Part shown: positions 10,019 to 62,121 of the stretch, one piece after another
Layout of the letters: each line of letters opens with the position of its first letter
Position numbering within the stretch: the stretch's first letter is position 1
Assembly (NCBI RefSeq): GCF_963853765.1
Contig: NC_088859.1
Location: forward strand, 51,894,001-51,958,000
Source: Magallana gigas
Taxonomy: Eukaryota
DNA: 64,000 bases
Direction of reading: 5' to 3'
Translations under genes and position numbers: made by a program
The notes under the pieces: model-generated
Database searches by the model: none
What the model was told of the DNA's origin: nothing
What the model saw: the letters and a program-made list of their open reading frames with translations, nothing else

Positions 10019-10089
10019 GACGCACCTCTTACTTGCTGACAATACGCGCCAACTGGATATTTGAAGGACTGGGGTGTCTTCTGATATAT

Positions 10090-10096
<7 letters not shown>

Positions 10097-10156
<60 letters not shown>
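10097..10156. repeat. (CT)n microsatellite
   Basis: About 30 CT units; source of the RERERE/SLSLSL ORFs. Confidence 0.95.
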
Positions 10157-10159
<3 letters not shown>

Positions 10160-10160
<1 letters not shown>

Positions 10161-32820: not shown

Positions 32821-34245
32821 CTGGAACAAAACAGAATATTGAATTTGTTATCCCAAAAATTCACATTTACATTGCATGATTCATCTTCAATGGCATTCAT
32901 CAAAGTGAAGGAGGTAGGCTAGCAAGATCTATCACAATCAATACTCTGTAGTAAACAGACGATTGTTTAGCACAGCGTAATTCTTTAATACACTAGAGGT
33001 ACAACTTGATTATTACTGATTAATGTAAATAAATCCAAGTAAGTCTGTGCTATGGGTCCACTTCATGAAACAAAACAAGTAAGTCTGTCTATGGGTCCAC
33101 TTCTTGAAGCAAAACTCAAAAGGTCAGTGGAAGTGAGAACACACTGACAAGTTAATGACTACTCTAAGCGCTGGTAGGTGGTCTGAAAGGAGTGATAATT
33201 TGGACGACCCAAATCACTCCGCAATCATCACCCCGGGGGGCATCGCGACACCGCGCCGCTGTACCGGGGGCAGCGGCTCTGATGGGTACTGTTATAACCC
33301 TCTATGGTCAGTAATACGTATTTTATTCATACAAACAATTTTTCGACATAAAAAGAACATCCATGACTCTATATAAAACCATTATTACGTTTCATTAGGC
33401 ATACAGAGATAAGAATATTTACGACTTAAGGTATCGGGTGTATACATTGTGTATGCATACCCCGCCATGCCTCAGCAAATTCAAAATAACACAAAATTAG
33501 GTCACATTTAATCTCAGGTTAACTGAATGTTAACAATCATGTTAAATGTTCACACATATTGTAATTAAATATCAGCTACAAAACCTACCGGTAAGATTAA
33601 ATATAATGCCCGTGAATCTGTCTATCTCTCTGATCAAGCGAGATTGTTAGAAAGCTATGACATCACACCCTTCCCAAAATTCCCCGCTTCTAGGAAAGGT
33701 GAAGGTCGTGTGAAGTGGGAAATCCAAAGCGACATTCACAAGTTTCAAGTCTAGGTAAACTGTGTCCTGTTTATATGAAAAACAGAATCTGTGATTCTGC
33801 CCAATTCATGTTAATCAATAGTATGCAACTATGCTGCTGCATTAATTCGAATTTCCTCACTCACCACAACATCATGCATAGCTATACACATGTAGGCTGT
33901 TGCAGTATATTACTATGCCTACATACTCAGTAAAACGTCCCTGATTTCATCAAGGGCTTTAATCGGACACGTATCATTATGATCTTTAAAACTAGATATG
34001 GAGAAGAATTGTTTCATTTTCTGTAGAACATCTTTTAAATGTATCATTTCAACTTTTGATTATTTATCTGATAACATCTTTCATGTGTATCAAAAATGTA
34101 TAGGCCGTATATAGGCTACATTTCAGATTTGCAATATTGCAAGTTGTGTAGTTAATTAACAAAGATGATTTCTAACCAATTGATAAAAAAACAAACAAAA
34201 CAATATAAAAAAATTATCTTGATAAAGCTGATCGAGTTCATACAT

Positions 34246-34589: not shown

Positions 34590-36467
34590 ACTTAATTGTG
34601 AGTTATCCCTATACTGATGCATATGTGGACACATTGCACAGATATACTGATGAATGGAATTTATCTGTTAATGTACAAAAAACCAAAATTGTAATTTTTA
34701 GAAACGGAAAATGTGTTAAAGATAATGAAAAATGGGAATACAATAGCAAATACGTAGAAGTAGTGAATCAATTTAACTATCTTGGTATGTTGTTTTAACT
34801 ACAATGGTAAATTTTTATCTACACAAAAGCAATGTTCAGCATATCTAGTAAAATGAAAGATTTGAATTTTAATGTTGAAACTCAATTGAATGTTTTTGAT
34901 ACTTTAATATGTAAAAAGTGTACTTGGTTATGGTGCTGAAATTTGTGGATTCCATAAAGGTCAAGATGTAGAAAAAGTCCATATAAATTTTTGTAAGAAT
35001 TAAGGTTTTGGGTGTTAGAAAAAATACTTGCAACAGTGCAGTTTATTATGAAGTAGGCAGATTTCCATTAGAGATTTTCAGGAAACAAAAAATTTTTAAA
35101 TACTGGTTTAAATTAAGAAACAGTAAAAACTGTATTTTAAAAGCATGCTACGAAGACATGGTGAAAAATAATGACATATGGATTTCAAATATTAGGAAAG
35201 AATTGTCCATCTTAGGCTTAGCCGATTTATATCAAAGTACTATGAAAGAGTCTGTTATTTTAGATATTATATTTAAAGCTGCTTGGTCCGATTTTTTATC
35301 AAATTTTATGCACGCTTTTAAACGATGGTTATGCTTAGTATATGTATAATAATAGACATTGCAGTTGTTTTCCCAGTCAATTAAGCCAAATTTCAATGAA
35401 GAAAAATACGTACACATTATTGCTAACAAAACAAACGACATAAAAGGGTACCGCGTTATTTCGCCTCATGTTAAATTTCACCCCTGACGACGAGGCGGGT
35501 ATAGTTGTATTACGACTTTGTCATCGCTTTGAATCGCTTTGAATAAGGGTCGAAATGATCAGACAAATTACAAATAAACATGTGTACGTTTTGTTCGCTA
35601 ATATTTCTGAAGTTTGTTTTCTTTACAATCGATGCAGAGCATGCGTGTTGAATGACCCCTATCATTCGGGGGACGAAACCAAATGGTTTCTTTTTCTAAA
35701 CATTCCCGTGATGCATTTTGGTTTGTTTTTTCGTTTGCCCAAAGAGAAATTATTTTTATTTACTTTGAATATCTCTAACTTTGAAAGGAGATTGATTCTG
35801 CTGGTGTAAATAGGAGAAAGTCCATAACTTTCTACGATAAATGGTTTGTATGGAAAAAATTTTGATACTGTAATAACAAATAAATCGGACCAAGCAGCTT
35901 TAATAGAATGTGTGATGTCTTTAAACAAAAAGTTGCTAACGATATAAGCAATGCATCAAAATGTATATTATATAAACATGTTGTTGATCATTTTTGTTTA
36001 CAAGTTTACCTAAAGAAACCAATTCATGTAAAATATCGTAAATTAATTACACGCTTACGGTTGTCCTCACATGACTTAAAGATTGAAACAGGGAGGTATG
36101 ATAATTTAACACGTGATTGTCGAAAATGTGAATCTTGCAACTTAAATGTAATTGAAGATGAGTTCCATTTTTTACTTATTTGTCCATCACTTTGTAGTTT
36201 AAGAGATAAGTATATTAAAAAATACTACTCCCGAAAACCAAGTGTCTATAAAGTTATACAGTTATTATCTACCTCTAATACTAAAGAACTGTGTAATTTA
36301 GGTAAATATTTATATTATGCAAACAAGCAACGAACTCTCCATGTGAATTATCCAAATTGATTATGTACACTTTGTTTTTCTTACTGTTTATTTAATATGT
36401 ATATGTTCATATGTATAACCTATGAGACATTTGTCTCTTGGAATAAAGAACTTGAACTTGAACTTGA
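34590..36467 (+). mobile_element. 5'-truncated, decayed CR1-type LINE interrupted by a DNA transposon
   Basis: WNLSVNVQKTK, FNYLG, LGVRKNT..AVYYEVGRFPL, LRLSSHDLKIETGRY...CESC..IEDEFHFLLIC. Frameshift near 34798. Tail AATAAAG(AACTTG)n at 36442-36467. Related to the 12151-12842 fragment. Confidence 0.88.
35277..35899. mobile_element. Kolobok-like non-autonomous DNA transposon (623 bp)
   Basis: TTAA TSD at 35273-35276 and 35900-35903. TIR AGCTGCTTGGTCCGATTT / AAATCGGACCAAGCAGCT. TTAA with RR...YY ends fits Kolobok. Confidence 0.85.
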
Positions 36468-39400
36468 CAACTCATGGTACAGTATTGGCAAAGCCACTCA
36501 TGCAGGCATGTTAAATACAGATTAAAAATCTATTCAGAGTGATATATGAAAATAGATTTGCAATATGAGTTCAGCAATAATAATATACTGTCATATATAT
36601 GGTACATTAACTGAATGTATGAAATTAATTTTGACCCAACTCTTAAAATTATGATTGTCGAATGAAAATTAGATCAGCAGCTCTATATGTCATGTCATAT
36701 AATGAAATTGATAACTGCATTTATTTTGTGCTTCCACCCCCTCCCCCACCCCCTCCCCCACCCCAACACAGATGCCTCAATTCACATCAGTAATCTGATA
36801 ATTTCTAGAAGTCTCTATAATGAGTAGATGTAGTACTGCATGGGACATTTGACTTAGTACAAGAGGATCAATAGCTTACTAATGGGATTAATGGTACAGT
36901 AACTGATGAACATCATCAAATTCACAATTAACGGTAATTACGGGAAGTTCCATTTTATCACAAGATGGTACCCAGCCTATGTCACTCTGTGCTGACATTA
37001 ACCTCACCAAGACTGTGTACTCAGGTCCACCATATGTCACTCATAATTACTTTATTGATTGATTAATTATAATAATATCAAGTAATGATTTATTATATAT
37101 CTCTTAAATAATTTAAGTAATCAATCAAGAAGTGAATTTTTGAAAAGAAATGTATTTAAACACATACCTCAATGTAAGTCATGGCCTATTTTAGAACAGC
37201 CGTAATTTTTTTACTTCTTTGTGATATTGGACACTTGTTATTCAGAAAACATATGTTACATAATGTTATTATAGCTAGGGCCCTAGGGGAGATGATCATA
37301 GCCTACACAAGTTATATGTGTAGAGACTGAGAGAGGTGACGCTTACCTCGGGGTGCACAAACCATAAGGAAGTAAGAGCACCAAGGTGTTAGGATACATA
37401 CAAGTCATCTGTGTCGTGTACAGGTGGAAAATGAAATTTGGTCCAAATTCCCAAAGTCCATTGTAACAAAGCATACTTAGTAATATCACAACCTCATATT
37501 TTTATTTAGATGCAGACATTGAAGGTCAGTTATTTTTGAATGAGTACCGTACTAGCATTTTTGTTTCAACAAGTTGGAAAGTCTAAGAACTATTCTGATG
37601 TTGTTTTATAGCTTGGAGTAATATGTTTGTGGAAGTACAAATATGCTTATTTTGCATCTCTAAGTTTTCCTCAGATCATGTTATGGTTTTTGGTAAATAT
37701 AAAAAGCTGAAAATGCTTTTAGAAATATTAAAAATGGAATGGTAATGTTATGACAATATTCATGTTTCTATTGATTTTGGCAATCATGCCCTTTCTGTAT
37801 AGTTTTTGGCTGACATGCATATACGATAACAGAATTTTGTTAACTGCATGCACTCTGGATTCAGAAATTGGATGACATTAAGGATTGATGATTGATCTGT
37901 TAAATGTAACATATTGAGGTGTAAATGTTTTAGTTAAAATTTAATGAAACTAGAGTAAATATGCAGGGTATGACTGTATAGATAAGTTAAGCAGTGGGAG
38001 ATATTAATAGTTCTTTCCATCTGAGTTTATCAGTAGTTAAAAAAGTCTAAGATAACATCCTTAAAGGTTTGGAATAATTTTAGCCCCCTAACGAACACAA
38101 CATCTGATTCATGGCAGTTATAAATTAGATTCTATGATGTTTGTTTTAAGGAGTCTGTAGATAAAGCTAAAATACACAAAACTCAGAACAGAAGTAGCAA
38201 TAAAATGGGGGCATCTGGGGGAGGACTTAATCCGCAGGTATCAGAGGGAACTCGGATGTCTCCGAGAGGAGTGGGTGAAATGTCTCGAGTTACCTCATCA
38301 CAAATATCAGGTTTCAGAACAGCTGAACACCTATATCCTGGGTCTCTGGCTGACCTGATGACACCTGGTTCTGACCTATACCTGGCTGGGGTTACCTTTG
38401 ATCTCATGCTCCCGTGCTTGCAATCTGGACAAAAACATCTGTTTTGTGTAACTGAGGGGAGAACTCCTGCCAGTGATGATGATGGAGGCTAACTTTACAG
38501 TGCATTAGCTGATGGGAGAGTATAGCTGCTGAGAACCACAGGCTCGGAGGAAAATGATTGATGGCATCTCTCTATCCATCTGTAGGTTTGATCAAGATAG
38601 AGAGGAGGCTTTGGTCTTCAATGTCATGAAAATCAGCCCTTAGATAACTAGCCAGAATCATTACATGATGTTGATTACTACTAACTGTCATTTCCTGTCT
38701 ACATGCCACAACATGACATTAAAGGACATTTTGCACATATTAACTTTGAAACTATTCCTAAATCTGTCTGATTTGTGTGATATGTACTGAGCTAGTGTCA
38801 GGGTTCTCCTAGGGCTCTCCAAGCTACGCTCAGCAGACATTGAAGGTTATTCGCACCAGATGACAAACAGAGATACAGGCATATATCACGGGCTTAAATG
38901 AATTCCAAACCACGGAAGCAGGTTAAATTATGTAGATAATGGCCAGACTGTCAATTTGACGTGAAAGTAGCTGAGGAAATGACAGATTTCTGTGTATTGA
39001 ACGGTGACCCCACTAACCCCCAATCTACTGGACAAACTGTGATCATTTACGTCTCGTTCTCTATGGTATCACAATTTTGGATCTTGAGAGGATGCTGGAT
39101 CATTAGAACATCAAAGTCAGCTGGCTCCCTGATATAATTCTCTGTATCCTAACACTCTGTGGGGAGCATAAAACAGAGAAAATCCACAGACACGTACACT
39201 GCTTCCTCTAAATGTTTTGAAGGAGATTGAAAAAAAAAGTTTCAAATGAATGATTTCATTGCTAAGATTAGTATCTCCCTTTTCTTTATATGTACATCTT
39301 GAGCACCATACCAGCAAATTTCCCAAAGAACAATATTTTTAGCAGTGTTGCTGGAAATCCCCCTCTTTATGGTATTGCTCTATGGCTCTTGTATTTTTTA

Positions 39401-42400
39401 CGTTGATCAAGAGTTTGACATTTCCCATCACTGTGTTTTGTAGAATGTGTTATCTGGTAAGACTGGTTGTGTCAATCGCCCGGCTACCTGTGTGATAACG
39501 ACTCTAAATGTCCATCACTGTACAGGTGTGACTTCTGTACACCTGTACAGGTATGTTGTCTACACAGTGCACATCAGGCAGGTTACCACTGCACATGTCA
39601 TACAAGTGTCAGAACTCTGTACACAACAGAATAAATGTCATAAAACAATTAAACACTAACAGATGATAGCAGGAAGAGAAACAAGTCCACAGTCTGAAAT
39701 AAACTCACACAGTGCAGACAAATGATAGAGAACTGCTTCAGAAGATGAAAGATGTGAATACTGCATTACCTTCAGGTCTGGTCCCTCAGCTACAGACTGG
39801 ACCCTGTCAACTGGTCCCCTGTCACAGACTGGTCCACGATTAACGGTATCCCTATCTCCAGATACACACGGAGTAATACATTCAATCAATAGAGCCTTGT
39901 AACTGTAGCCAGCTACGACAAAGAGATCTGCTGGTCTGTCTGCCGTGGCTGATATCGAGTGCTGTAGCAAACAAATCGTGGATGCTGGCCCAAAGGGAGA
40001 TAACTGTCACAGATCTGAGTATTGTACTCTCATATAACCCAGCTAATGAAACAGAAGCATGTGTATTGTGTTTGTTAACATGAGTGAATAACTTGCTGGA
40101 CTCAGCTTCAGTTGCATTGTAAAACTTAAGTACTGATGGTGATTGAAGATTGACAGGATGATTGGCATGTGTAGTAGCTGGGGAAAAAACCCCAACACAT
40201 ACTATAAAACCCAATACACAAAACCCAGTACACAAAATAATGCAATACACAAAAGATGAAATCAATGCTTACAAGGGAATAAATCCACCAAATAAAGTAA
40301 TGCCTAGCTAATATGCAAAGATGAACAATGCACAGAATAATGCCAGGATTGAAATCAATACACCAGCTAGAGCACAAGTATACACAGGCTGAGGTACTTA
40401 GGTATAATCACATGCAGTACTTTGATGACAGAAAGACAGAAGGAAGCTCAGAGACAGATGGATGAACAGAAAGATGAACAGAGTAATAGACAGTCAAAAA
40501 GTTTAATAACCTCCAGTGAGGAAATTATTTACCTCATTTACATGTGATTTGAATTGCATACTAGCATGTTTTGACAAAGTGCAGCGAGACAGGAGAAAAC
40601 TTGTTAACGAAACCGGCTCGGAGATAAACTTATCCAAGTGTTTGTTTTTTAACAGAATTAGAAAATGATGGCATGCTTGAAATAACGGGAATCTCTATCA
40701 GTAATCAGTAGACAGTTTTTGGAGGGACCTGTAGAAATGAACCGCAGCGCCCTGACAGGGCCTCAGTTTTGTTTGCACCAAGTCAGGCATTTGAATGGAG
40801 TAGGTGTAGAGCTTGTCAATTTTCTGCCCACCTGATTTCTGTGGGTCCCTTGAATACCTGTGATTAATCAGGTACAGGTAAAAATAATGTCAGATTGTAA
40901 CCAAATATTTTGTTGAAAGCTGTGATTTAATGACAAAAACCCCACAATATAATCAGACCTCCACATCAGACGGTAAAGTTGAATGCTGCAATTGCAGATT
41001 TTATTAAAATATTTAGAAGTTCGGATGATCAGAGCCTTTGGCTTGGTTAGGGTCTTAGGGAGCACCCCCCACTGGTCCTTGCACCTGTAGGAGGCATGTG
41101 TGGGCGTACCAGTCAGATAAGACGAACGCTGTAAATATGCAGCGATATAAATATCATTTTCAATTCCGAGTGTATTTATTTAAAACTTTAAACTTTTTTT
41201 ACTGTCTGTTGTTGGGGTCATTGCAGTAACCTGTGGACGCTTTGGAGCCATTGTTTCTGAGGGCGTTGGTTTTTGTGTGTCACAGAATGACCTTTGAGGT
41301 CAAACTCTTTTATCTTATAGATCCTTAAAAAAATTGAAAGAAAAGATCTAAAGTAAAAATACCGATCTCCTGAGCAGCTGATAGTTATTAGGGATACAGC
41401 GGAATGGAACTGATCTTTGCAAGGGGCTAGATCCAAACTTGTAGATAGAGAGCATTACAGGGGAAGATGTCAAAATATTTGTGTCTGTTCCATATGATGT
41501 GAGATATGATATGGTAAGGGTTTACTACACAGAGGTATTAGACTGTCGGTAGAGGCTAGATCATTGTAACAAAACAGCTGAGATATCACTGAACAGCAGG
41601 GTAATTAACTAGCCAAGGTATCAGTAAAAAACGAGACCCTCCCTGACTGGCTGACCAGAGGTCAGGCTGTACCGGTACCAGTCCCATAGAGACCTGGGGG
41701 GGGGGTGTCATCACAATGTATCTATTTGTGTCTGATACAGCCAGCACTCAGACTGAATGTCATAACACACTGCTAGCTTATTCTCTTTAACAACAGTAAG
41801 TTAGCTAGTAGTTATGAAGGGAATCTTGTTTCCATGCAGCTTCCTTTGAAGAAATATACAGAGTGAAGTAAATTCCCCATTGATCCCTGGGGTAGGGGAT
41901 CCATCCCCTGAGGTAGGGGATCCATTCCCTGGGGGAGGATCCTAGGTGTTTACCTTAGGCCATTGCAAGTTTTTTCTTTGTTTAGCGTCCACCCAAAACT
42001 CAAAAACCTATCTTTCTATCAGGGAAAAAAAACCAAAAACCTTCCTAGAAACTAGAAAATAAAAAGGAAATGACTACATCACATGACCCCAACTCATCCA
42101 TCCTGTCATAATTTTGAATTTTGAGAATCTTTTTGACAGAAAAGTTTGAGACAACTAGTCTAAGACCTGACCAGGCATCACTTACAATTGTTGTTGGTTG
42201 ATGTATCTCTTGTATGTTGTATTTTACATGTCTGATTCACTCATAGACTTGAAATCTGAAGTCATGTTTATGGTGGAGAAAAGTGCTAATGTATTTCCAT
42301 TGCTGTAGGAGCAAAACTAGTGTATTTGTTATGTCTCTAACCCCTGGTTGACTGATTCAGGGTAAAGGAAATGAAGATCCTTCATTCTAGGGAAAAGTTT

Positions 42401-50378: not shown

Positions 50379-50383
<5 letters not shown>

Positions 50384-50456
<73 letters not shown>
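50384..50456. repeat. (CT)n microsatellite
   Basis: Direct observation. Confidence 0.95.
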
Positions 50457-50457
<1 letters not shown>

Positions 50458-51911
50458 GCACCAATATATGTTTTCAAAAGGCACCCTTTTGGTTTCTAGC
50501 TAATCCAACCTTTTCAAATAATTTTTTTTTCATGAGTTTTTATCAAGTAATGCATATACGAGTTTTGTTATTGGCCAAAACCTACAGGAATGTATACTAT
50601 AGTATACCATCAGCATGCTGTTGTTGAAAAAGGAAATTTTGCTATGTAATGCTGAGACTGAGAGAATAAACTATCCATAGATTGCCATTGAAATACTAGT
50701 ACATCTCAGTCGCGTCATGAAGGGGTTCCAAGTACTCATTAACTGCTCTCTACATACGGGTGTGGGCAGATAAAACAATATCAGAACTGATTGATTATCA
50801 AAAAAGAGATACATCGTATAGAACTGTTGCTTGTAACAGCCAGAAGAAAGAAACGTACCCACATATTGTATTAGGAATAACGAGAATCGTTTTAATCAAA
50901 TAAAAAAGACATGAATTGGAAAATGTTGTCGAACGCTCCTTTAAAATGTTTCAAATCACGTGACCAAGGGAACAGTCATTAATTCATTTTTAATTCTTGC
51001 AGATAGTATCATGTGTTTATTTGATGATACTTTCATCTCCAGAAAATGTTTGATATTATTTCCAATGTTAATCCAGTAGTTTTAAGTTAAACTTCCACAC
51101 ACAAACATATTTTATCATGTCAACAAATATATGTATTACTCTTGTGAGTTATTAAATAAGGTTGTTTACCATGCACACCTATTTGTTTGTGATTGAACGT
51201 TTTGCATGATTTATAATGCCTTGACAATAAACACGCTTCTGACCTTGGGCTTAGCGTGCTTCAGGGCGGGGGAATATGTAATCTCCGGCTCGGCAGTTGG
51301 CGCCTTCATCGACATCACGTGATTTGATGTCATCTGAAATTATCAGAAACATACGCAGTTGTATGATATTGACGATCTATCATATGTATTAAAGCTGAAG
51401 TTTTATTCATGATGCCGTATATATAACCAAACCTGCATGGAGACTACGAGTCTAAATGCAGTTCCTAAAAGCTTTGCAATTTCAGAAATGGACCCGAGGG
51501 ATGAACAATTTCCACGCATTTTAAGCGGGGAATTCAGGCCCAAAGTAGAATCGCCAGCTTAATTACATGTTTCCAACATCTCAAACGATTCTAAATCAAT
51601 GTTGCAGGCAGTGTTTTCACAAAACTCAGTAGATAACAGGCTATTTGTGCACTTCAAACTCAGAAACAGTGCAAGTATATTGATCTGTATTTGTTGATAC
51701 ATGCAAATACCACGCATGGTTGATTGATTTTTTGGGCCGTTTGAGGTGAATTTTAAATGGAACGATTGAAATATTGCAGTTGCTGCCTTACTCATATTGT
51801 TTTTATTTCGAAAAGAACGTAGAAAGTGAACAGTTCTGATGACGAGAAAAGTAATAAATATATCAACGTAGTAAAGTTTTGAGAAGAATCGAGTCCTTAG
51901 AAAAAACTTAC

Positions 51912-52110: not shown

Positions 52111-52294
52111 CCATCATCCAGTTGTTGCTTTTTAATGTCACAAACTATGCCATATTAATTGTGTGTGTTTTTAGAGATGGTATGGCGAGGGGGGGCCTTT
52201 CCTATATTGTTTTTGTTGTTGTTTTTTGCAATTTTGTTGTTCATGCTTGAGGTACATGTACTTCCCATTTTCTTGCATTGTACAGATAATGTTA

Positions 52295-52297
<3 letters not shown>

Positions 52298-52360
<63 letters not shown>
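52298..52360. repeat. (CT)n microsatellite between the divergent first exons
   Basis: Direct observation. Confidence 0.95.
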
Positions 52361-52365
<5 letters not shown>

Positions 52366-52598
52366 TTAAAATATTTATCTCGCGATGAAATGATATTTCT
52401 GTCGGATAAGTTTTAAAACTTTAACTACATACTACGCTAGATGAACATCGCAGTAACATAATTGGATTAAATGATTCAAATTCATGTTTACATTACACAT
52501 TTTCTGTCGATTTTTGTATCCCAAATTCTGTAATTGGCTGTCTTTGCTGTCATATCCATGACAGATCCGTAACTAACCCTTCACACCGAGCATTGTCC

Positions 52599-55500
52599 AT
52601 GCAATGGCCCACCGAGATGAAGAGGCTAGGAACTTTACAGTTTTCTTTCCTGTTCTTAAATGTGTTGTTCTGGGTGAGTCTGCAAGTTTGTTTGTTTTTT
52701 TTTGTTTTTTATCTCATAATGTCCTCTTTGCCGACCGCTCCCCTTTGCTTCAAAAAGTCTGTTTTTTAAATCAAAATCGTATGTATACTACAAAGACTAT
52801 GCATCAACAAAAATCCATTAACCTTAAGTTCTTTGATCCTAGAAATACAACTTTGTATTGATTATTATTTGTTTAAGCCTGATAACTTTATTGTCTTTAG
52901 CATTGATTCAGTTGTCAGTGTTGCGATCTAAGAGAAAAAAAGTTCACCTTATAATGAAATAACAAAACTCATCTAATATGGAATCATAAACCAGGAGAGA
53001 CCATGTACGAGCGATAATCACGTGTGGACGATACTAATCGATTGATCGATCCTATTACTGCATCCTCTGAGTCAAGTCGGAATGGAATCCGTATTTCCTT
53101 ATCTTTGATTCCATTCGGAGAGCTTGCTTGTTCCGGTCGCATCCCCTGAGCCAAAGCGGAACTTCATAAAAACCAAAACGGGAAATACCTTTCAAAAACA
53201 GTATTATAATACATTTATAAGCGGAAGGTGTTTGTATTCTATTGAGTTGATCTGTGACCCTTTTATGCAGATGGACTACATTATTTGTTGAAATTACAGA
53301 TATTTTCCGTGGCTTTTAATCTATCTCTTGAAAATAGCAGGATCGGGAATAGTTTTCAGCACTTCAGCACTACACGCAATTGTCTTCTGTTGCTGCATCC
53401 TTCATGGTTCTTGTCAGAAAACTGATTTTATTATTGCTTCAGTTGGATTAACTTTGATATTACATTACTTTGATTCGTATTGCGTGTGGGTTTTTTTTAT
53501 TGATACGATATGCCTCCCCTGATTTGACAGTCTGTATTAGTACTCGTGTTCAAATTAAGGGGGGGGGGGGGCAAAATATGATATAAAAACCATCAGATTT
53601 AGCTAAAACTAAATATGTGATTTTTCAACCTGTCAACTGATATTTGGTAAAGAAAAATTTCATATAATTTTATCATTTTCCATTATCTTTATATGGAGCT
53701 CTTCTTTAAAGGGGGTCAATATTGTCTTAAATGGCAGCCATCCCCAGCCCTTTGGTCAAATATTGAAGAATTTGAAAATTCTGCACAGATTGTATTTTGA
53801 CTATAATGTGCTTTTATCTACATGTCCTATACCACCTTAAATTCAACCTAAAACCGAAAAGTGCTGGCCTCAACGTCTTCTAACGTCTCTTACTGACCCC
53901 GTTATTAAAACGTTGAATTCAGTATCTGGTACTAACTCTGTATTTTTTTCTGTTATATTTTGTTCAGTTATTATTCATATAATGATATGTTCCTGTAATG
54001 GATTATTTTGTAACACGGCGTGTTTTGTCCCGTCAGGCGGTGGGGATCGGTATCGTGGGCTTCGTCTCATGGACACTGTCCTCCCTCCCCAGTAACACAG
54101 AGTTCCTCTCAGTGGCCTTTGTAAGTAACGTTCACCTCAACTATAGGTTGATAATTTTTTAGAAGAAATCCCAATAACAAACAATTTAAAGCAAGATTAA
54201 ATTAAAAGATTTTTTCGAGAAGGTGATAAATAAATTGTTTTCCGAAATGTTCTGAGATTGATAATTAATCGACGGGCGATTGCCTTTATTGTATTTATCT
54301 CTGTCTTCAAGTGACATCTGGCTTTTGGTCAATTTCAGGCTTTCCTGTACGTCATCTTGTTCTTGGGACTCGTCATTGCAGCCACAGGTATGTGTAATTT
54401 TTCCTGCAGTCTGACACGCTCACCTACCAGGTAGCTAACCCCCCCCCCCCCCCCGGATAAGTTAACCCTGACCTGAAGCCTGACTCATCACTCCTACTGC
54501 ATGACAGATAAACCAAGCCGCCACCCGCTCCTTACCCCCCCCCCCCCCTCCCGAAAAGTAAACCCCAATGACTGACTTCTCACCCTTATAGATAGGTTAA
54601 CGCTACCGTCATAACCCCCCTCCCCCCGAAAGGTAAACCCTGAGGTTTGATTCTTTATAACCCCTCCCCCGATAAAAAAATTTCCTGAAATCTTACTCGT
54701 CCTTTCCACTTGCAGGTAAACCCTGCCCTTCTAATAATGCATGCGATTTAGTACAGAGGCAGTAGTCGTCAAGACGGCTCTGTCCGACACCACACTCCTC
54801 CCCTTTGGTGTTGGTATTCAGTGATGTGAAATGTGTGTTAAATATTTCGCATAGTTACATCTTCTTTGTTGACGTACACCAGACTTGTAGTCGTTGGAAT
54901 TGTAGAAGAATATAATGTGTGAACCTTCACTTAAGGTGCATTTTGCCCTGTTAAGCGCAGTAACTCTCATGCTGACTTTTTAAATTTCTTACATGTATAC
55001 AACCTTATTTTTTAAGATAAATAAAATAATATTTACATTTTCCCGTGTCTTTATCTATGATAACACTACGAAGAAATTTTGCAATGTATAGATCAATACA
55101 GTTCATCAATTATGAAATGATTTATTCTCATATCAATAACATCATTAAAACAGTAGTAAATTACATATTAAATGAACATTACAGGACTTTTAGGATGCCT
55201 CGGCGGGTTGTTCAGAAGCATCTGTCTACTCAAACTTGTAAGTATTCAGAGGTAATAGAAAAATATATATAATATATAAAATGACCTGTTGTTTAACAAT
55301 TTTAGCCAATGTGTCTGTCTATCATTTAAAAGGACTAATTTTCCTTACTCGGAAGTGTGCCGAGTTAAAGGATGATCAGAATTAAAAAAAAAAAAGATGA
55401 AGTCTGTGAAAGATTAAAAAATATGTAAATTGCATGTAATTTAGAAACTTAAATATGCAATCACGTTCAAGCCGAAATAAGTCGCGTTGCATGGAATTCA

Positions 55501-57939
55501 GGCTCAGAAACCTTTCCCTGTGTAATGTTTGTTGCTTAAAAATGTACATATTCATTTTCTTTCTTTTATTTTTTTTTTCAGTATATCGGATTAATGGTGG
55601 CTTTCGTTTTCGTGGAGGTTGCCATAGCAATAGGTGCTTACACTCAGAAGGATCAGGTAGGACAGTGACGTCATATGACGCGATGAAGACGTCAAACACC
55701 GATACATCATGTCTCTATATGTCAGGATCTGTAGTGTTTGTTTGCTTCGATAAAAACTTTTCACCGACCAATGTATGAGATATCTCTGTTAACAGATTCC
55801 AACACTGATCACCTCCACGTGGCCCCAGCTCAACAACGACACAAAGTTCACACTCCAGGCCGGGGTAAGTGACGGCAAGAGGCGGGGGAGGGGGGTAAGT
55901 TTGGTAATAGTGGGGTAAGTGACGGATATAAGCGGGGGTAATAGTGGTAAATAGTGGGGTATATGATGGCAGGAAAGAGGGGGTGAGTGGGGGTAAATAC
56001 TGGGGTTAGTGAAAGGAAGCAGCGGTGGGGTGGGGGGCAAGTGTAAAATAAAAATGGGAAAGTGAGGGTGATAGAGGGACAATAACGGAAAGTAAGGGAT
56101 GTTAGTGTGAAAAATAGCGGTTATATGTGACTGCTGCGGCGTGTGTAACTGGTGGCGGACCATGGTGGGGTAAATAGTTTGGTGAGTAAATCAAAGAGGG
56201 GGAGTAAGGGACGGTAACTAGGTCGTGGTTTTATGTGTCGGGAAAGTTTGCTCAATACCCGGAGTAAAGACATAGGAAGGGGTAAATAATGGCATGAAGC
56301 GGGGGTATGGAGGGAAAGGGAGGCGGGAGGATCAAGCAGCAGGGCAAGTTGCGGGGAAAGAGAAATAAGCTGGTGGAGTCGAGTAGTCTGGCTAAAAGCA
56401 TACAAATTGTAAAGTAACAAAAATATAGTTGTCCTGTATTATGGCAGTGACTAGTATTTTAGACAGAGATGAGACATTGCCACAGTTATCAGGGAGGGGT
56501 GTTAATTTTTTCAGCTGGAGTGTTGTGGGGTCAACAACTACACAGAGTACGGCGCCCACCTAGCGGACCTCCCCCTCAGCTGCTTCAAGGTCTATGACAC
56601 CCTGTCGGTCCACACCAAATCATGGACTCTTCTCTTCACGGTGGGTCTCGACTCATCAACTCGTGACCTAACTGGTTTCAAATTATTTGCCTTTATATGC
56701 TGTAATTACTGTAAATACTGTTGTTTATGCAGTAAATGGTATCAATACGTAAAAAAATTTGGTCTATTTTAGACGCCATGCCTTCAGCAGCTTCAGCACT
56801 GGTTCGATGCCAACCTACCAGTCTGGGCGACAATACTGGTTCTCATCTGCCTCATACAAGTAAGAGATATCATATGATTGATATATTTACTGAGAATGTT
56901 TGTGTAACCAATAACCAAGTTATATATTTAGTATTTACCGACCACTACGGCCCTGGGTTTATATTTCTTGTAGTTTATGAGTATGGGGCTAAGCGTGGGA
57001 GTAATGGTGGGTATAGAAGAGAGGACCAAAGTCCACCCGGCTCCGGATCCACCTGACGAGGAACAACCTGCAGACGGCGCAACCATTGTCTGTTCCGAAT
57101 CGCCTCATCCTCAATCGTCACGCATGAGCGAGTTCTCGGACCAGCAGTCCCTGTCCTCGGGGGACACAACAAACCGGAAGTTGTCGCAAGTTCCAGAAGA
57201 AGAGGAGGATTACCTGTCGTCGGGTGTCGTCTGCTGTGACTCCAAGGACGACCTCAGCACCACAAGGTCCCCAGCGTCGTCTGTCCGGCACTTGGTGACA
57301 GAAGGCACGGAGGAGACTGGTGTTGGGAAAGATGAAGTGAACGAGGAGGAAGCGGTCATATCCGAGGGTCCAGACAAGTCCGAGGACTCAATCCCAAGTC
57401 ACAGGGACCTCCTGGTGGCTTACAGTGAAGAAACCAGGAGATATGAGAATCAGCCAACGCCAGAGACCAATGAGTTGGATAACTTCCAGTCCACAGGACT
57501 TCAACAAAACAGTGGAGAAAACGCCGCCCAGCAAGATGATGTCCGCGGCCAGACAGCGTCTCCCATCTCCTCACAACCTCCTGAAGACACCTCCGCTGGT
57601 GATAGAGATGAAGATAATATCGATGACGTCACCACTGGAAGACATGTTGATGAAGGAAGAATGGGCATCCAGACAGGACTGGAAGGAGGCGTCCAATTTC
57701 AAGAAAACGACGTCCAGCATCAGACACTGGAAAGTGATCAACACGAGACTTCGAAAGATGCAGACAACATTTCAAATGTTCAACCTAGTGAGAGCGAGAT
57801 TAAAACATGCGAACTACAGGAAGGGAGCGGTGACAAATTATCGAACAAGAACTTAAGGAATCACGAAGAAGTGACACTTTGTAGAGAGGGGACATTTGAT
57901 ATTTCAAAGGACGAGAATCGAGCATCACAGAACAATTGA
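52599..57939 (+). CDS. Tetraspanin (about 527 aa) with a very long acidic C-terminal tail
   Basis: Exons 52599(or 52617)-52673, 54037-54120, 54339-54387, 55185-55237, 55582-55656, 55796-55864, 56515-56640, 56773-56859 and 56974-57939 join in frame. TM1 FLFLNVLFWAVGIGIVGFVSW; TM2 FLYVILFLGLVIAATGLLGCLGG; TM3 YIGLMVAFVFVEVAIAIGAY; large loop LECCG...PLSC...TPCL; TM4 WATILVLICLIQFMSMGLSVGVMVGI. AATAAA at about 58075. Confidence 0.92.
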
Positions 57940-59837
57940 GTACCGTAATCCAATTACATGTACCAGCGATCTACTACGAGTTATCCCGCCTTGCGTACTT
58001 AACGAATTTACCGCAAATCGAATCAAGTCAAATATTGCACTTACTTGTTTAATTTATGCGTACTTTGCCGTAGGAATAAATCAACTGTAAATAGAATTTA
58101 GATTTTTATTGTTAATTTTACGCCAAATGTTTTGGGGTTTTGTGATAACAAGTTCATTTCGTCCAGAAGTTCCTCTGATCCTGGTGCATTGAATCGCTGG
58201 CGGGTTTTTGTCTGGCTTGAATGAGATCGTATCTGTGAGACGTATGGTAAACTCGGACACTCAAGCTTGAGATACTTTAGTCTCAGCAGTAACAGGTTCG
58301 ATATGGAGATAGCATCAAAGTGAAATCGGTGCATACTAGTCTTTTTTTTTATCTTTCTGAACGAACTATACGCAAACAACAAGATCTTCTCGATTTTTTC
58401 TGTTCGAGTTCACACGTCTCCATTGTAGAAACATTGTAGTACATCGTCTTTAAATTGGTGGTGCTAAAAAAAGAGGAAAGATAGTAGACCTCTTTTTATT
58501 TGAAAAAGGCTGTCAGTGACCGGCAGTTCACAGTAATTGCCAATAACATCGTAGCAATTACTTAAAATTGGTTCTTGATTTTTACTCAATTTGTGCGTGA
58601 TTTCATTTGACCTTGGATAATTGAATTATATCTCTGAATGTTTTCGCATTTATAAACATATCTGTGTATATATTTTATAAAATTGCGGCGATATCCTAAT
58701 CAACCCCATGCTGCCCCACAGCATGAAGTTCACATTTTTGAAAATCAACAATTCTCCAGTTACAAATTAAATTTAAGGTGTGTTAGGTTTAACAGTGTGA
58801 ATTCCAGGGAGATAATTGCTTTCTGTATCTCTTTCTGTTGTTTTTCATTGTGATAACGTTACTCCTAGATCCAACTAAACCTCGACTATCTTGTATAAAG
58901 TCAATAGGAGCCCAGATACCACCTTGTGGTGGAAATCGACCCGGCTTGTCTGTAAATCAAAAGTAAGAATAACAAAGTTTTTACAGGTTTTATCGCATAT
59001 ATACATCAAAGTACTGAAGTACTGACGGGAGTTGATTTTATCAATTATCATTTATTCAAAATCAATGATATGTGATTTTCCATGGCAAGTAGTATCAGTA
59101 ATAGAAATATTTCTGAGAAATTGTATGGATCCAGGCAAGATTGAACTCTTGTCTTGTTCAACCAAACGCTCGACCGTCTCCGTTTATCTCCGACAAGCAA
59201 GAGAGACTCTGTTTTGTCGGATATTAACGGAGCCAGCCAAGCGTCTGGTTGAACGAGACTACATTGAACTCTAGCGTAGGAATACATACGACTTTAAAAA
59301 ATATCTAAACTGTTTGTACAATTTAAAATCTAACTATTTTCCTGGTATTAATAAACAAGTTTTCTTGAAAAACAATGCTTCAGAATACAAAACATCGAAT
59401 TTATCGATTATTTTCAAGAACTAAGTGTTGTCAGCGGTATAATTGATTTGTGCTTAGGTCCAAACACTGTTTCACTTTCGCTTTGCCCGAGTAAGTGCAT
59501 AGGAGAGTTGATTAAAATCAACTCCCAAAAAGTATACTTCACACGTTGATCAATGTTTTTAATCATATACCACCCCCCCCCCCCCCAAACATCCTTAAAT
59601 AAAAAAGTTGCGCGCACATTATGTTCAGATCGCTTGTCTGTAAAGTAGCACCTCGCAAATTGTTCAACAAACAAAGGACACTGAAACTTGTGTAAAACAT
59701 TGTGTAACAAATATATAACGAATTATTCCTATAAAATGGCAAGTCAACTCCCCGTAAATTAGCGGGTGTCGTGACGTAACACCGATCTCAGTTAGACCAC
59801 AACACGTAAACTGTAACATGAAGCAGGTGTCCCTTCA

Positions 59838-62121
59838 TCACCTTCCCATAATTCCCGCTGGTGATTTCCGCCTGTCTAGTTCCGACTCTATGACATAGTC
59901 TTTGAATTTTTCAGAGTTCTCCATTTTGTCATGGATAAACCACAGAACAGCATAGCAGAAGAGAGTGAATACTATCAACACGAACGTCACCGTCACCACT
60001 GCGATAGCGAGGCTGAGGAGATGGTAATCGCAGTAATGTATTGCGTCCTTATCCTCCGTTTGGGCGATTTTTAACAAATTATACACCAGCACAGCACCTG
60101 TAAAATACAAATTGGATAATTAGCGAGCTTGTACATACCGAACACAGCTGGCATCACGGTACACGTGTTAAGTAGATGATCTAGGCGGGATAGAGTTTGA
60201 ATGTTCATGCAAGTAGTCCAAGTGAAATGAAATTTAGTATATAATGAAGTACAAATATGTATTAACGCAGTTTATGACCCCCCCCCCCCCTTACAGACCT
60301 CTTCCATTTGAGCGTAATAAGTATGGTAGAGGCATGTTGCCCATGAAAAGTACTATAGGAGAGTTTTCCAGAAACCCGCGCTGTTTTAAACATCCGTCTA
60401 TTTATCAATTTGGAAGTAATTAATGCCAAGGATTATAACGTGTAAATATTGTTTATATTTAGTAAAGTACAGACCTAAGTCACCAAACAAAACATCTCGT
60501 AAAACTGGGGGGGGGGGGGGAACTGCAATTGCAACACAACTTTCCGTATATATGGTACAATGTAAGACAGTTACTTTGGAAGAATTAGAATAGTCAGCTT
60601 GTAAAGAGCTTGATTAATTAACATACATGTATCATATCTTGCATATTATAACTCCGTGTACATTTTTTTACCCATAAATCTCCTTATGGGGATCCACACC
60701 TGAATCCCTACAACTAGAGATTAACATGTGAAACCTTAGAACTAACAATTAACATAAAATGTGAACCTCTATCCTAGAGATCTACACGTGAAGATTTATA
60801 TGTGAACCCCTAAACAAGTGATTTACATATGAAACCTTAGAACTAGAGATTTGCTGTGAACCATACGAACTAGCATGAGATTTCAAAATGGCTGAATCCC
60901 CATAATGAGAGATTCTGGCCTGTAAATCTTGGAAGAGAGTTTACCTGGCTGTGTGGGTGGAGATAAGCTCGACCAGAAAGTTTACCTGTGTGGGTGGAGA
61001 TAGCTCGACCAGAGAGTTTGCCTGTGTGGGTGGAGATAAGCTCGACCAGAGAGTTTACCTGTATGGGTGGAGATAAACTCGACCAGAGAGTTTGCCTGTA
61101 TGGGTGGAGATAAACTCGACCAGAGAGTTTGCCTGTGTGCGTGGAGTTTACCTGTGAATCCCCAGAACAACAGAAACAACGTCAGCATGTCCGTCACAGT
61201 GTAGAGACAGTGTCGCTCGCCGTCAGGGGGCGCTATCTTGAACATGATCCGGGTACCCTGGAGAACACATTTAAGTAAGAGCGCTGCTCCACTGAGAGTC
61301 AGGAACAGGGGAAGCAGGGGCTCACAGGGGCAGTTGTGGAACTCCAGGATTCCTAAAACAAGATGGTTAACCAATCAAATCACTTCGCTTTCAAAATAGA
61401 AGAACTAGATTAGAGATTGTACCCATGCAGATTTTATCCACACCCCCCCCCCCAAAAAAAAATCAACATTGTCTGTTAACGCCTTGACAACATTCATGTA
61501 CGTACACAATTTCTTTCACAAGGTATGACTTTATTCATTAGAAGGCTGTATACATGAACATTGTATCTGCCTCTGTCTCCTTCCTTTATCGTATTTACCA
61601 CACAATGAGCCCGATTATAAGCATATTCTTCGGTCGATTTGTCGGATTGTTGCTACAATCTCCGTACGTCGACTTGATGCCAACAGAAGCACAGCTAACC
61701 CCTATAGCAGGGTGATGGAGAACGGCGCCGATTGATCGAGTGTTACTCACCAAATGTCAAACACAGAACTGATATCGCCAGGCCAAGTGTCAGCATCAGA
61801 AGTCCCACCACTACAGAAAGTTGTACAAACAATTACTCGATTGATTAAAATGCATTAGACAGATAGATGACAGCAAACGTTTACAATTTAATTACTAATT
61901 GAACTGTTTGACCTTGACCTTGATGTCAACTCACCCGATTTATTGAAAGAGTTGTTAACGTGACAGATAAAGTTGTATGCATCCTCCTCCTCCATATAAG
62001 CGTTTTGAAGAACCTGGCAATGACAGCTTTTCCCGCCATTTGAATCCTCGTGTACTGTAACGGTAACCATCGGCAAATTAATGAATCTATCGTCTGCTTT
62101 CTTCATAGAAAGGTTACCCAT
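59838..62121 (-). CDS. TMEM272-like four-TM protein (about 235 aa)
   Basis: Exons 62121-61935, 61810-61751, 61352-61152 and 60097-59838 join in frame. VGLLMLTLGLAISVLCLTFGILEFHNCPCEPLLPLFLTLSG...LFLLFWGFTGAVLVY...HYCDYHLLSLAI resembles the TMEM272 pattern (CP..P.IP.YL.V.G; F...W...G..W; C...LY). A possible extra first exon 62246-62177 (MASPNDFLLQ...) could splice to 62093. Confidence 0.72.
60935..61155. repeat. 38-bp intronic minisatellite containing copies of the exon donor
   Basis: Minus-strand unit CAG(GT/GC)AAACTCTCTGGTCGAG(T/C)TTATCTCCACCCA(T/C)A, about 5.5 copies. Confidence 0.9.

What the first reader, a model, noticed from the sequence alone, without database searches (positions are those of the whole stretch)
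56974..57939. Tetraspanin with a ~307-aa acidic, disordered C-terminal cytoplasmic tail
Seen: after TM4 (…SVGVMVGI) the last exon continues for about 307 aa (EERTKVHPAPDPPDEEQ…DENRASQNN), rich in D/E/S/T/Q, with a KVHP motif just after the membrane and a VVCC pair. Known: most tetraspanins have short C-tails of roughly 5-20 aa; peripherin/ROM1 are longer but well under this. VxP motifs act in ciliary targeting of some membrane proteins. Inference: a lineage-specific tetraspanin that has acquired a large intrinsically disordered signalling, scaffold or ion-binding domain. The ORF track hides this by showing only the tail.
Basis: partly seen in the sequence, partly recalled or inferred. Interest (0 to 1): 0.7.

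Follow-up and report, generated by a model that had tools for sequence, protein, structure and literature searches.

The report
Oyster tetraspanin with long acidic tail
The last exon of a Pacific-oyster tetraspanin gene really does encode a 307-residue acidic, disordered cytoplasmic tail; it is transcribed, is found only in true oysters and holds a strongly conserved 79-residue block next to the membrane, but the gene is already in RefSeq as an 'uncharacterized protein' and its function is untested.

Summary
Window 56974-57939 (+) is exon 9 of a nine-exon tetraspanin gene. It encodes the last 14 residues of TM4 and a 307-aa tail (pI 4.2, net charge -45).

- **Transcription:** RNA-seq contigs from two runs splice exons 2-8 into this exon through GT..AG introns and run uninterrupted past the stop codon. 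No joint lies inside the tail.
- **Identity:** exons 2-9 translate exactly into Magallana gigas RefSeq XP_019925306.3 and XP_065921851.1 ('uncharacterized protein', PF00335 at 93 bits).
- **Orthologues:** long-tailed orthologues (258-444 aa tails) exist in Crassostrea virginica, Saccostrea echinata and Ostrea edulis.
- **Range:** an exhaustive profile search of 1.84 billion representatives found the tail nowhere else, and it is single-copy in this genome.

The tail is modular:
- a 79-aa juxtamembrane block, 82-86% identical across genera, with invariant HPAPD, SEFSDQ and GVVCC;
- a variable acidic linker;
- an invariant YENQ motif;
- a fast-evolving distal part (11-22% identity) that keeps its charge.

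AlphaFold2 predicts disorder (pLDDT 43).

My reading is a cytoplasmic docking or regulatory platform, which is inference. It is a new variant of a known kind, catalogued but undescribed.

The parts
52599..52673 (+). Canonical first coding exon: N-terminus plus the first half of TM1 (MQWPTEMKRLGTLQFSFLFLNVLFW), followed by donor GTGAGT.
   Evidence: Located. It is 17/19 identical to the first exon of the O. edulis orthologue P0049, whose PF00335 match covers profile positions 2-219 of 225. No spliced RNA joint from this exon was seen in the four runs laid.
33276..33306 (+). 3' end of an alternative first exon. Its last three bases (33304-33306) are an ATG in frame with exon 2. An out-of-frame upstream ATG lies at 33282.
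   Evidence: The loose end of RNA contig X14 maps here and joins canonically to 54037.
33726..33754 (+). 3' end of another alternative first exon. It is non-coding in this frame and ends in an in-frame TAG.
   Evidence: The loose end of RNA contig X13 maps here with one mismatch, with an AG|GT donor.
37510..37524 (+). Alternative first coding exon (MQTLK) of RefSeq isoform X3.
   Evidence: The peptide of P0014 was found here, followed by GT.
40462..40482 (+). Alternative first coding exon (MNRKMNR) of RefSeq isoform X2.
   Evidence: The peptide of P0015 was found here, followed by GT.
54037..54120 (+). Exon 2: second half of TM1 and the short EC1.
   Evidence: Spliced RNA contigs X13 and X14, AG/GT borders.
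54339..54387 (+). Exon 3: TM2.
   Evidence: RNA joints 54120>54339 and 54387>55185; tblastn to P0006 at 89% identity.
55185..55237 (+). Exon 4: end of TM2 and the cytoplasmic loop (GLLGCLGGLFRSICLLKL).
   Evidence: RNA contig X14 record 5; AG/GT borders.
55582..55656 (+). Exon 5: TM3.
   Evidence: RNA contigs; tblastn at 77% identity to P0006.
55796..55864 (+). Exon 6: first part of EC2, with the NDT glycosylation sequon.
   Evidence: RNA joints; tblastn at 88% identity; sequon conserved in four genera.
56515..56640 (+). Exon 7: EC2 with the CCG motif, the NYT sequon and the third cysteine.
   Evidence: RNA joints; PF00335 E=0.005 on this exon alone; cysteine pattern conserved.
56773..56859 (+). 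Exon 8: end of EC2 (fourth cysteine) and the first half of TM4.
   Evidence: RNA joints 56640>56773 and 56859>56974 in contigs X13 and X14 and in raw poly(A) reads of X22.
56974..57015 (+). Exon 9, start: second half of TM4.
57016..57252 (+). Conserved juxtamembrane module of the tail, 79 aa. It holds KVHPAPDPPDEE, SEFSDQ, an S/T cluster, KLSQVPEEEE and SSGVVCCDSKDD.
   Evidence: 82-86% identical to C. virginica, Saccostrea and Ostrea. Most of the alignment's invariant columns fall here.
57253..57402 (+). Variable acidic linker.
   Evidence: 19-36% identity between genera, with large in-frame indels.
57403..57477 (+). Second conserved element: LLVAY..(6)..YENQ. It holds the only helix AlphaFold2 predicts in the tail.
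   Evidence: L146, V148, Y150 and Y157-E-N-Q160 are invariant in all nine sequences. Helix at 152-157.
57478..57939 (+). Fast-evolving distal acidic region and the stop codon (57937-57939).
   Evidence: 11-22% identity between genera and 76-77% within Magallana. Length and sequence vary, while net charge stays at -37 to -52.
57940..58080 (+). 3' UTR reached by RNA contigs (to 58073), and an AATAAA at 58075-58080.
   Evidence: The true 3' end is not determined.

Best explanation
This is the terminal coding exon of a single-copy tetraspanin gene of the Pacific oyster (Magallana gigas). The gene is restricted to true oysters (Ostreidae).

**Core.** The core is an ordinary small CD9/CD81-like tetraspanin with a short EC2, a CCG motif plus two further cysteines, and two N-glycosylation sequons.

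**Tail.** With the standard topology, TM4 is followed by a 307-residue cytoplasmic tail that is intrinsically disordered and strongly acidic. The tail has three kinds of part:
1. A 79-residue juxtamembrane block under strong purifying selection. It holds a proline-rich HPAPDPP box, a serine/acidic cluster around SEFSDQ, and an invariant double cysteine (GVVCC).
2. A second short conserved element that ends in an invariant YENQ.
3. Linker and distal segments whose sequence and length drift quickly but whose net negative charge is kept.

**Proposed mechanism (inferred).** The conserved short motifs act as docking and modification sites.
- The Ser/Thr cluster would be phosphorylated.
- The CC pair would be palmitoylated, pinning the tail back to the membrane.
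- YxNQ resembles a phosphotyrosine site of the Grb2-SH2 type.
- The charged, variable remainder would serve as a flexible spacer.
Together these would turn a membrane-organising tetraspanin into a platform that recruits cytosolic partners.

**Shown:** gene structure, transcription, family membership, restriction to oysters, modular conservation, predicted disorder.
**Inferred:** topology, every modification and every partner.
For: - **ORF is real:** its statistics and raised GC.
- **Transcribed and spliced:** X13 record 2 joins exons 2-8 to 56974-57072. X14 record 6 runs from exon 5 through to 57735 without a break. X13 record 4 and X14 record 7 carry on to 58014 and 58073. All six listed joints are GT..AG and none lies in the tail. 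Raw poly(A) reads of X22 cross 56859>56974 and tile the tail in the orientation expected for a + strand RNA.
- **Independent cDNA evidence:** a 496-aa ORF (P0017) seen on four Logan contigs can only come from spliced cDNA.
- **Matches RefSeq:** exons 2-9 translate exactly into XP_019925306.3 and XP_065921851.1, which score 92.7 and 93.1 bits on PF00335 against a cut-off of 32.1.
- **Ordinary core:** the best solved relatives by sequence are CD9, CD81 and TSPAN7. The Atlas model of the O. edulis core aligns to a tetraspanin cluster at TM 0.78.
- **Orthologous tails:** 258, 259 and 444 aa in O. edulis, S. echinata and C. virginica. All carry VHPAPD, SEFSDQ, GVVCC and YENQ, with net charge -37 to -52.
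- **Modular conservation:** block identities are 82-86%, 19-36%, 52-60% and 11-22%.
- **No relatives elsewhere:** 5 hits at E<=1e-3 among 1.84 billion representatives, all oyster. The tail is single-copy in this genome. It has no Pfam family and no tandem repeat.
- **Disorder:** AlphaFold2 gives mean pLDDT 43 and one six-residue helix.
Against: - There is no protein-level evidence that the tail is made.
- Expression in the poly(A) runs sampled is low (about 1x at 1% sampling in one run, none in the other).
- The 5' end is unsettled. There are at least five alternative first exons. The RNA-supported ones give either a Met directly fused to half of TM1, behind an out-of-frame upstream ATG, or an in-frame stop.
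- The canonical exon 1 has no spliced read here.
- The motifs are short. Their reading as phosphorylation, palmitoylation or SH2 sites rests on my own knowledge of consensus sequences, not on a test.
- The AlphaFold2 alignment had only nine rows, so low confidence is weak proof of disorder.
- The distal half may be close to neutral.
Confidence: 0.6

Rival explanations
1. Only the juxtamembrane block and the YENQ element are functional. The distal ~150-290 residues are a nearly neutral extension, for example an old stop-codon loss into former 3' UTR, tolerated because disordered acidic sequence is harmless.
For: The distal region is 11-22% identical between genera and differs by about 185 residues in length. 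Public assemblies hold frameshifted distal variants (P0003, P0005). There is no predicted structure.
Against: The frame stays open for 258-444 codons in four genera, with in-frame indels only, and net charge and S/T content are kept. Within Magallana the last 22 residues are nearly unchanged.
Confidence: 0.2
2. The acidic tail is a low-affinity, high-capacity cation (Ca2+) binder. Because tetraspanin tails face the lumen of exosome-type vesicles, it would load or buffer calcium in vesicles, for instance for shell formation.
For: Net charge is -45 with 23% D+E and 20% S/T, and this composition is kept in all four genera while the sequence drifts. The gene is restricted to a heavily calcifying lineage.
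Against: No calcium-binding family or repeat was found. The best-conserved parts are specific motifs, not acidic runs. No tissue information could be obtained. Other calcifying bivalves appear to lack the tail.
Confidence: 0.08
3. The membrane-proximal V-H-P-A is a VxPx ciliary targeting signal. The protein would then be a ciliary tetraspanin, as the first reader suggested and as the name 'CFAP251-like' of the C. virginica model might seem to imply.
For: V-x-P-x lies five residues after TM4 in most orthologues, inside an invariant HPAPD.
Against: A four-residue pattern is expected by chance. The V is I in one species (P0004). Known VxPx signals, from my own knowledge, sit at or near the extreme C-terminus. 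The CFAP251-like name has no domain support: the C. virginica protein matches only PF00335.
Confidence: 0.07
4. The long ORF is an annotation or assembly artefact: a separate transcript, a retained UTR or a mis-join. The real tetraspanin would end shortly after TM4.
For: None of weight. Coverage by raw reads is low and only four runs were laid.
Against: Spliced contigs from two RNA runs are continuous from the core exons into and through the ORF, in frame. The same architecture appears in four genera. The chance of such an ORF is about 1e-7.
Confidence: 0.03

Closest known systems
CD9/CD81-type tetraspanins (Pfam PF00335)
   Same: Four-helix membrane core, a TM2-TM3 junction motif (GLLGC.GG....C), CCG plus two cysteines in a short EC2, and glycosylated EC2. 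PF00335 scores 93 bits. The best solved relatives are CD9 (E 1.4e-8) and CD81.
   Different: Textbook tetraspanins have short cytoplasmic ends (PMC7140794), some tails as short as four residues (PMC2652832). Here the tail is 307 aa (258-444 in orthologues) and makes up about 60% of the protein.
Peripherin-2 (PRPH2/RDS) and ROM1
   Same: Tetraspanins whose C-terminus is longer than usual, intrinsically disordered and functionally important. PMC7140794 cites Milstein et al. 2017 for the disordered C-terminus with an inducible helix.
   Different: Their tail is several-fold shorter (about 60 aa, from my own knowledge) and their EC2 is large and cysteine-rich. Here the EC2 is short with four cysteines, and the nearest solved relatives are CD9/CD81, not peripherin. 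The tails share no sequence similarity.
RefSeq automatic models: XP_019925306.3 and XP_065921851.1 (M. gigas), XP_048764010.1 (O. edulis), LOC133174889 (S. echinata), 'CFAP251-like isoform X2' (C. virginica)
   Same: The same gene and its orthologues. The M. gigas models contain this window's exons 2-9 exactly.
   Different: They are unnamed or misnamed. No paper in the searchable library mentions them, and nothing on their tail was found.
Disordered cytoplasmic domains of cytokine receptors, e.g. growth hormone receptor (PF12772)
   Same: This is a 'works like' resemblance only: a long disordered tail with a membrane-proximal proline-rich box and distal tyrosine motifs. These were the nearest clusters by language-model features (score 0.77).
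   Different: The score is below the tool's threshold for a lead, and Pfam finds no match. It is not a member.

Membership tests
Tetraspanin (PF00335) | Match to the family profile above the curated threshold | tested here: met
   P0014 and P0015 contain the window's exons 2-9 exactly and score 92.7 and 93.1 bits against a cut-off of 32.1. The O. edulis orthologue scores 107.3 bits over profile positions 2-219 of 225. Exon 7 alone gives E=0.005. The joined model itself was not sent to any search.
Tetraspanin (PF00335) | Four transmembrane helices with cytoplasmic N- and C-termini | tested here: inconclusive
   TM2, TM3 and TM4 are clear. A canonical first exon carrying the first half of TM1 exists at 52599-52673 and is 17/19 identical to O. 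edulis. However, the RNA-supported and RefSeq M. gigas isoforms use other first exons that leave only about 13-18 hydrophobic residues for TM1. No dedicated topology predictor was available.
Tetraspanin (PF00335) | CCG motif and further conserved cysteines in the large extracellular loop | tested here: met
   LECCG plus two cysteines sit at identical positions in all four genera, with two conserved N-x-T sequons.
Tetraspanin (PF00335) | Tetraspanin fold of the core | tested here: met
   The Atlas model of the O. edulis orthologue (residues 2-216) aligns to a tetraspanin cluster at TM 0.78. Sequence matches to solved CD9, CD81, TSPAN7 and CD53.
Tetraspanin (PF00335) | Short C-terminal cytoplasmic tail (typical, not defining) | tested here: not met
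   307 aa after TM4. This is the finding itself.
Peripherin/ROM1 subfamily | Large cysteine-rich EC2 and closest similarity to PRPH2/ROM1 | tested here: not met
   The EC2 is about 87 aa with 4 cysteines. No peripherin or ROM1 chain was among the solved-structure matches at E<=1.
CFAP251 (name attached to the C. virginica orthologue) | Domains of a cilia- and flagella-associated protein 251 (WD40 repeats, from my own knowledge) | tested here: not met
   P0012 matches only PF00335 at E<=0.1. The name probably comes from low-complexity E/K-rich similarity.
Growth hormone receptor cytoplasmic domain (PF12772) | Profile match | tested here: not met
   No Pfam family at E<=1 for exon 9. The Atlas feature score is 0.77, below the level the tool calls a lead.
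VxPx ciliary targeting signal | A functional V-x-P-x that binds the sorting machinery | not testable with these tools
   The pattern V-H-P-A is present at 57031-57042. V is replaced by I in P0004.

The most novel reading that the evidence does not exclude
The tail makes this tetraspanin a self-contained signalling receptor or adaptor rather than a passive membrane organiser. A membrane-proximal proline box, a phosphorylatable Ser/Thr-acidic cluster, a palmitoylated CC pair and an invariant YxNQ phosphotyrosine site would recruit kinases and a Grb2/Drk-type adaptor directly. That architecture is otherwise known from cytokine and growth-factor receptors, and here it would have been invented once in the oyster lineage.
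Probability: 0.12. Interest if true: 0.7.

Novelty: new variant of a known kind. Interest (0 to 1): 0.4.

Why it matters
Tetraspanins are thought to act through their membrane core and extracellular loop, and their cytoplasmic ends are usually only a few to about 20 residues long. Here the cytoplasmic tail is 60% of the protein. Its first 79 residues are as conserved as the core across four oyster genera.

- **A natural experiment.** It shows a tetraspanin gaining an intracellular interaction module, and the invariant motifs are directly testable.
- **A case for IDR evolution.** It shows the typical pattern of a functional disordered region: conserved short motifs, drifting spacers and conserved charge.
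- **Annotation.** It corrects a misleading name ('CFAP251-like') and flags an oyster-specific membrane protein in a commercially important species.

The gain is limited. The gene model is already public and the function is unknown.

Tried and rejected
- **Pfam on exon 9 and on single exons:** nothing for the tail, and only a weak PF00335 hit for the CCG exon.
- **Protein Atlas on the tail:** nearest clusters are growth hormone receptor tails at 0.77, below threshold, with low recognition. I treat this as a loose analogy only.
- **Tandem repeats in the exon:** none, so the tail is not a repeat expansion.
- **Own-genome search with the tail and with the S. echinata orthologue:** only this locus, so no paralogous source for the tail.
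- **Word search with the orthologue's core (residues 1-196):** only oyster proteins. The test was weak because I set E<=1e-5 against a 5.8-billion database and candidates were limited to 249-791 aa. It says nothing about short-tailed relatives in other bivalves.
- **The look-up of encoding contigs:** No dN/dS was possible.
- **A Saccostrea-type N-terminal exon in the window:** not found.
- **Hydropathy scan for TM1:** it did not single out exon 1. The exon was recognised only after the O. edulis protein was in hand.
- **Minus-strand neighbour at 59667-60119:** looks tetraspanin-like by eye, but Pfam gave no match.
- **Literature:** searches by topic and by accession found nothing on this gene.
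- **Joined model:** Searches used exon 9 by reference and public protein ids. Joining was done only locally, to check frame and composition.
Full report
**Observation**

The ORF listed at 56977-57939 (+) is real. The open frame starts at 56974, right after a polypyrimidine tract and an AG. It reads FMSMGLSVGVMVGI, then EERTKVHPAPDPPDEEQ and so on to DENRASQNN and a stop.

- The tail after TM4 is 307 aa, with 70 acidic against 25 basic residues, pI 4.23 and GRAVY -1.23.
- KVHP lies at 57028-57039 and VVCC at 57226-57237.
- The frame has no stop, while the other five frames have 6-23.
- The chance of 321 open codons at this composition is about 1.6e-7, and none of 20,000 shuffles stayed open.
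- GC rises to 0.50-0.57 against 0.38 for the window.
- There is no tandem repeat.

**Gene structure and transcription**

I laid two RNA runs kept as contigs (X13, X14) and two poly(A) raw-read runs (X22, X23) on 52420-58400. The contigs are spliced at six listed GT..AG joints. After correcting for the aligner's ambiguity, these define the exons:

| Exon | Coordinates |
|---|---|
| 2 | 54037-54120 |
| 3 | 54339-54387 |
| 4 | 55185-55237 |
| 5 | 55582-55656 |
| 6 | 55796-55864 |
| 7 | 56515-56640 |
| 8 | 56773-56859 |
| 9 | 56974 onwards |

- X13 record 2 links exon 2 to 57072 in one contig.
- X14 record 6 runs from exon 5 to 57735 without a break.
- X13 record 4 (57309-58014) and X14 record 7 (57733-58073) pass the stop codon.
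- No joint lies inside the tail.
- X22 raw reads cross 56859>56974 (2 reads) and 56640>56773 (1 read), and tile the tail at about 0.5-1.7x with roughly 1% of the run read. Their orientation is the one expected for a + strand RNA. X23 shows none.
- An AATAAA lies at 58075. The exact 3' end is not settled.

Splicing itself shows that the contigs derive from RNA.

**Identity**

The word search with exon 9 found a 100%-identical Logan cluster of 542 sequences, ~82% relatives, and 41-55% relatives that include an NCBI protein of Saccostrea echinata carrying PF00335.

Listing that cluster gave two RefSeq proteins of Magallana gigas, XP_019925306.3 (507 aa) and XP_065921851.1 (509 aa), both 'uncharacterized protein'. 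It also gave XP_048764010.1 of Ostrea edulis (477 aa). A local translation of exons 2-9 (502 aa) is contained exactly in both M. gigas proteins. These score 92.7 and 93.1 bits on PF00335, and the O. edulis protein scores 107.3 bits over nearly the whole profile.

- The best solved relatives by sequence are CD9, CD81, TSPAN7 and CD53.
- The Atlas model of the O. edulis core matches a tetraspanin cluster at TM 0.78.
- The EC2 is short, with CCG plus two cysteines and two N-x-T sequons, all conserved in four genera.

Searches used exon 9 by reference and public protein ids, and joining was only a local frame and composition check.

**The 5' end**

The loose ends of the two RNA contigs map about 20 kb upstream.

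- **33276-33306.** Its last three bases are an ATG in frame with exon 2. It is preceded by an in-frame TAA and by an out-of-frame ATG at 33282 that opens a 27-codon upstream ORF.
- **33726-33754.** This one ends in an in-frame TAG.
- **37510-37524 and 40462-40482.** The RefSeq isoforms start at these small exons, MQTLK and MNRKMNR.
- **52599-52673.** This is the canonical first exon, with the N-terminus and first half of TM1. I recognised it from the O. edulis protein (17/19 identical). No spliced read from it was seen.

Hence a full four-helix product is encoded and conserved, but the isoforms seen here have a shortened TM1. This does not change the topology argument for the tail. EC2, with its disulfide cysteines and glycosylation sequons, should be outside, and the basic TM2-TM3 loop inside, so the C-terminus is cytoplasmic (inference).

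**Anatomy of the tail**

I aligned nine sequences from four genera and counted identity by block against the window's sequence.

| Block | Coordinates | Identity to C. virginica, Saccostrea, Ostrea |
|---|---|---|
| First 79 residues | 57016-57252 | 82-86% |
| Linker | 57253-57402 | 19-36%, with large in-frame indels |
| LLVAY..YENQ | 57403-57477 | 52-60% |
| Distal part | 57478-57936 | 11-22% |

- The first block is at least as conserved as TM4 (55-82%) and comparable to the core exons (71-89% by tblastn).
- In the LLVAY..YENQ element, L, V, Y and Y-E-N-Q are invariant.
- The distal part is 76-77% identical within Magallana.
- Invariant features of the first block include HPAPD, SES.HP.SS, SEFSDQ, an S/T cluster, KLS.VPEE and SSGVVCC.SKDD.
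- Tail length is 307, 258, 259 and 444 aa in M. gigas, O. edulis, S. echinata and C. virginica. Net charge stays at -37 to -52, pI at 4.1-4.5 and S+T at 17-20%.
- AlphaFold2 on exon 9 with this shallow alignment gives mean pLDDT 43, pTM 0.12 and a single helix at residues 152-157, inside the second conserved element.

**Distribution**

A profile of the alignment was scored against all 1.84 billion representatives. Only five scored E<=0.001. Four are the oyster sequences. The fifth, P0013 (79 aa), reads like a C-to-T converted copy of the M. gigas sequence and is probably from bisulfite data.

The tail is single-copy in this genome, with no paralogous source, and the core has no close paralogue at exon level. 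The tail has no Pfam family.

The family therefore looks confined to Ostreidae. Two caveats apply: a diverged tail in other bivalves would escape detection, and my core-based search was weak.

**Interpretation**

The pattern of conserved short motifs, drifting spacers and conserved bulk charge is that of a functional disordered region that works through linear motifs.

From my own knowledge of consensus sequences, and not tested here:
- An invariant CC pair in a cytosolic tail of a tetraspanin is a plausible palmitoylation site.
- The Ser/Thr-acidic cluster is a plausible multi-site phosphorylation region.
- Y-x-N-Q is the form of the Grb2-SH2 sites of the EGF receptor.
- The P/E/S/T-rich stretch between H21 and H45 resembles a PEST turnover signal.

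I therefore favour a docking or regulatory platform. The rivals are listed with the results that would refute them:
- a mostly neutral distal extension;
- a calcium-binding tail facing the lumen of vesicles;
- a VxPx ciliary signal;
- an artefact.

**Comparison and novelty**

Reviews describe tetraspanin cytoplasmic ends as short (PMC7140794), some tails with as few as four residues (PMC2652832). Peripherin-2 has a longer, disordered and functional C-terminus (PMC7140794, citing Milstein et al. 2017). It is several-fold shorter, and this protein is not of that subfamily.

The name 'CFAP251-like' given to the C. virginica model has no domain support. I found no paper on this gene or its accessions.

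I class it as a new variant of a known kind, of moderate interest.

The scan's index holds this same stretch only as the present finding, plus one note on another tetraspanin with an unusual tail elsewhere in the genome, which I did not test.

Noticed in passing
window 59667-60119 (-): Two open frames on the opposite strand, convergent with this gene, read like tetraspanin exons: a TM3-like hydrophobic stretch followed by HDKMENSEKF..., then ...LQFTCCGLTEIG. Pfam gave no PF00335 match on the single frames.
   Followed up: partly
window 54437-54552: Poly-C tracts in intron 3 collect hundreds of raw poly(A) reads (depth about 50 on both strands) whose loose ends are long C runs. This looks like a homopolymer or sequencing artefact, not expression.
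   Followed up: partly
window 33282-33306 and 54037-54095: In the RNA-supported first exon, an out-of-frame ATG at 33282 precedes the in-frame ATG at 33304. It opens a 27-codon upstream ORF that runs into exon 2. Together with at least five alternative first exons, this suggests regulated or leaky translation start.
   Followed up: partly
protein P0013 (public library), matches window about 57226-57450: A 79-aa 'protein' whose differences from the oyster tail are those of C-to-T conversion (S>F, T>I/M, P>L). It is probably a gene call on bisulfite-sequencing contigs, so an artefact in the protein library.
   Followed up: no
protein P0012 (C. virginica orthologue): It is named 'Cilia- and flagella-associated protein 251-like isoform X2', yet it matches only the tetraspanin family. 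It starts at TM3 (MQYIGLMV...), a two-helix isoform model.
   Followed up: partly
window 57110: RNA contig X13 and the public variant P0003 carry C>T, which changes Pro46 to Leu in a column that is invariant between species. The change at 57774 (A>T) is synonymous. The P0001 cluster representative has Asn>Ser in DEDNIDD.
   Followed up: partly
proteins P0003 and P0005: Public assemblies hold frameshifted versions of the distal tail, after about residue 245 in M. gigas and right after the YENQ element in a related species. These may be alleles or assembly errors.
   Followed up: no
window 34987-36357 (+) and 10799-11545 (+): Open frames that look like retroelement remnants, for example ...RLRLSSHDLKIETGRY... 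The first pair lies inside the 20-kb first intron of the tetraspanin gene.
   Followed up: no
window 23931-25529 (-): A 533-aa open frame on the minus strand, rich in Ser, Glu and Lys. It is probably a large exon of another gene with a low-complexity region.
   Followed up: no
window 10085-10160, 50380-50460, 52290-52350: Long (CT)n/(GA)n microsatellites.
   Followed up: no
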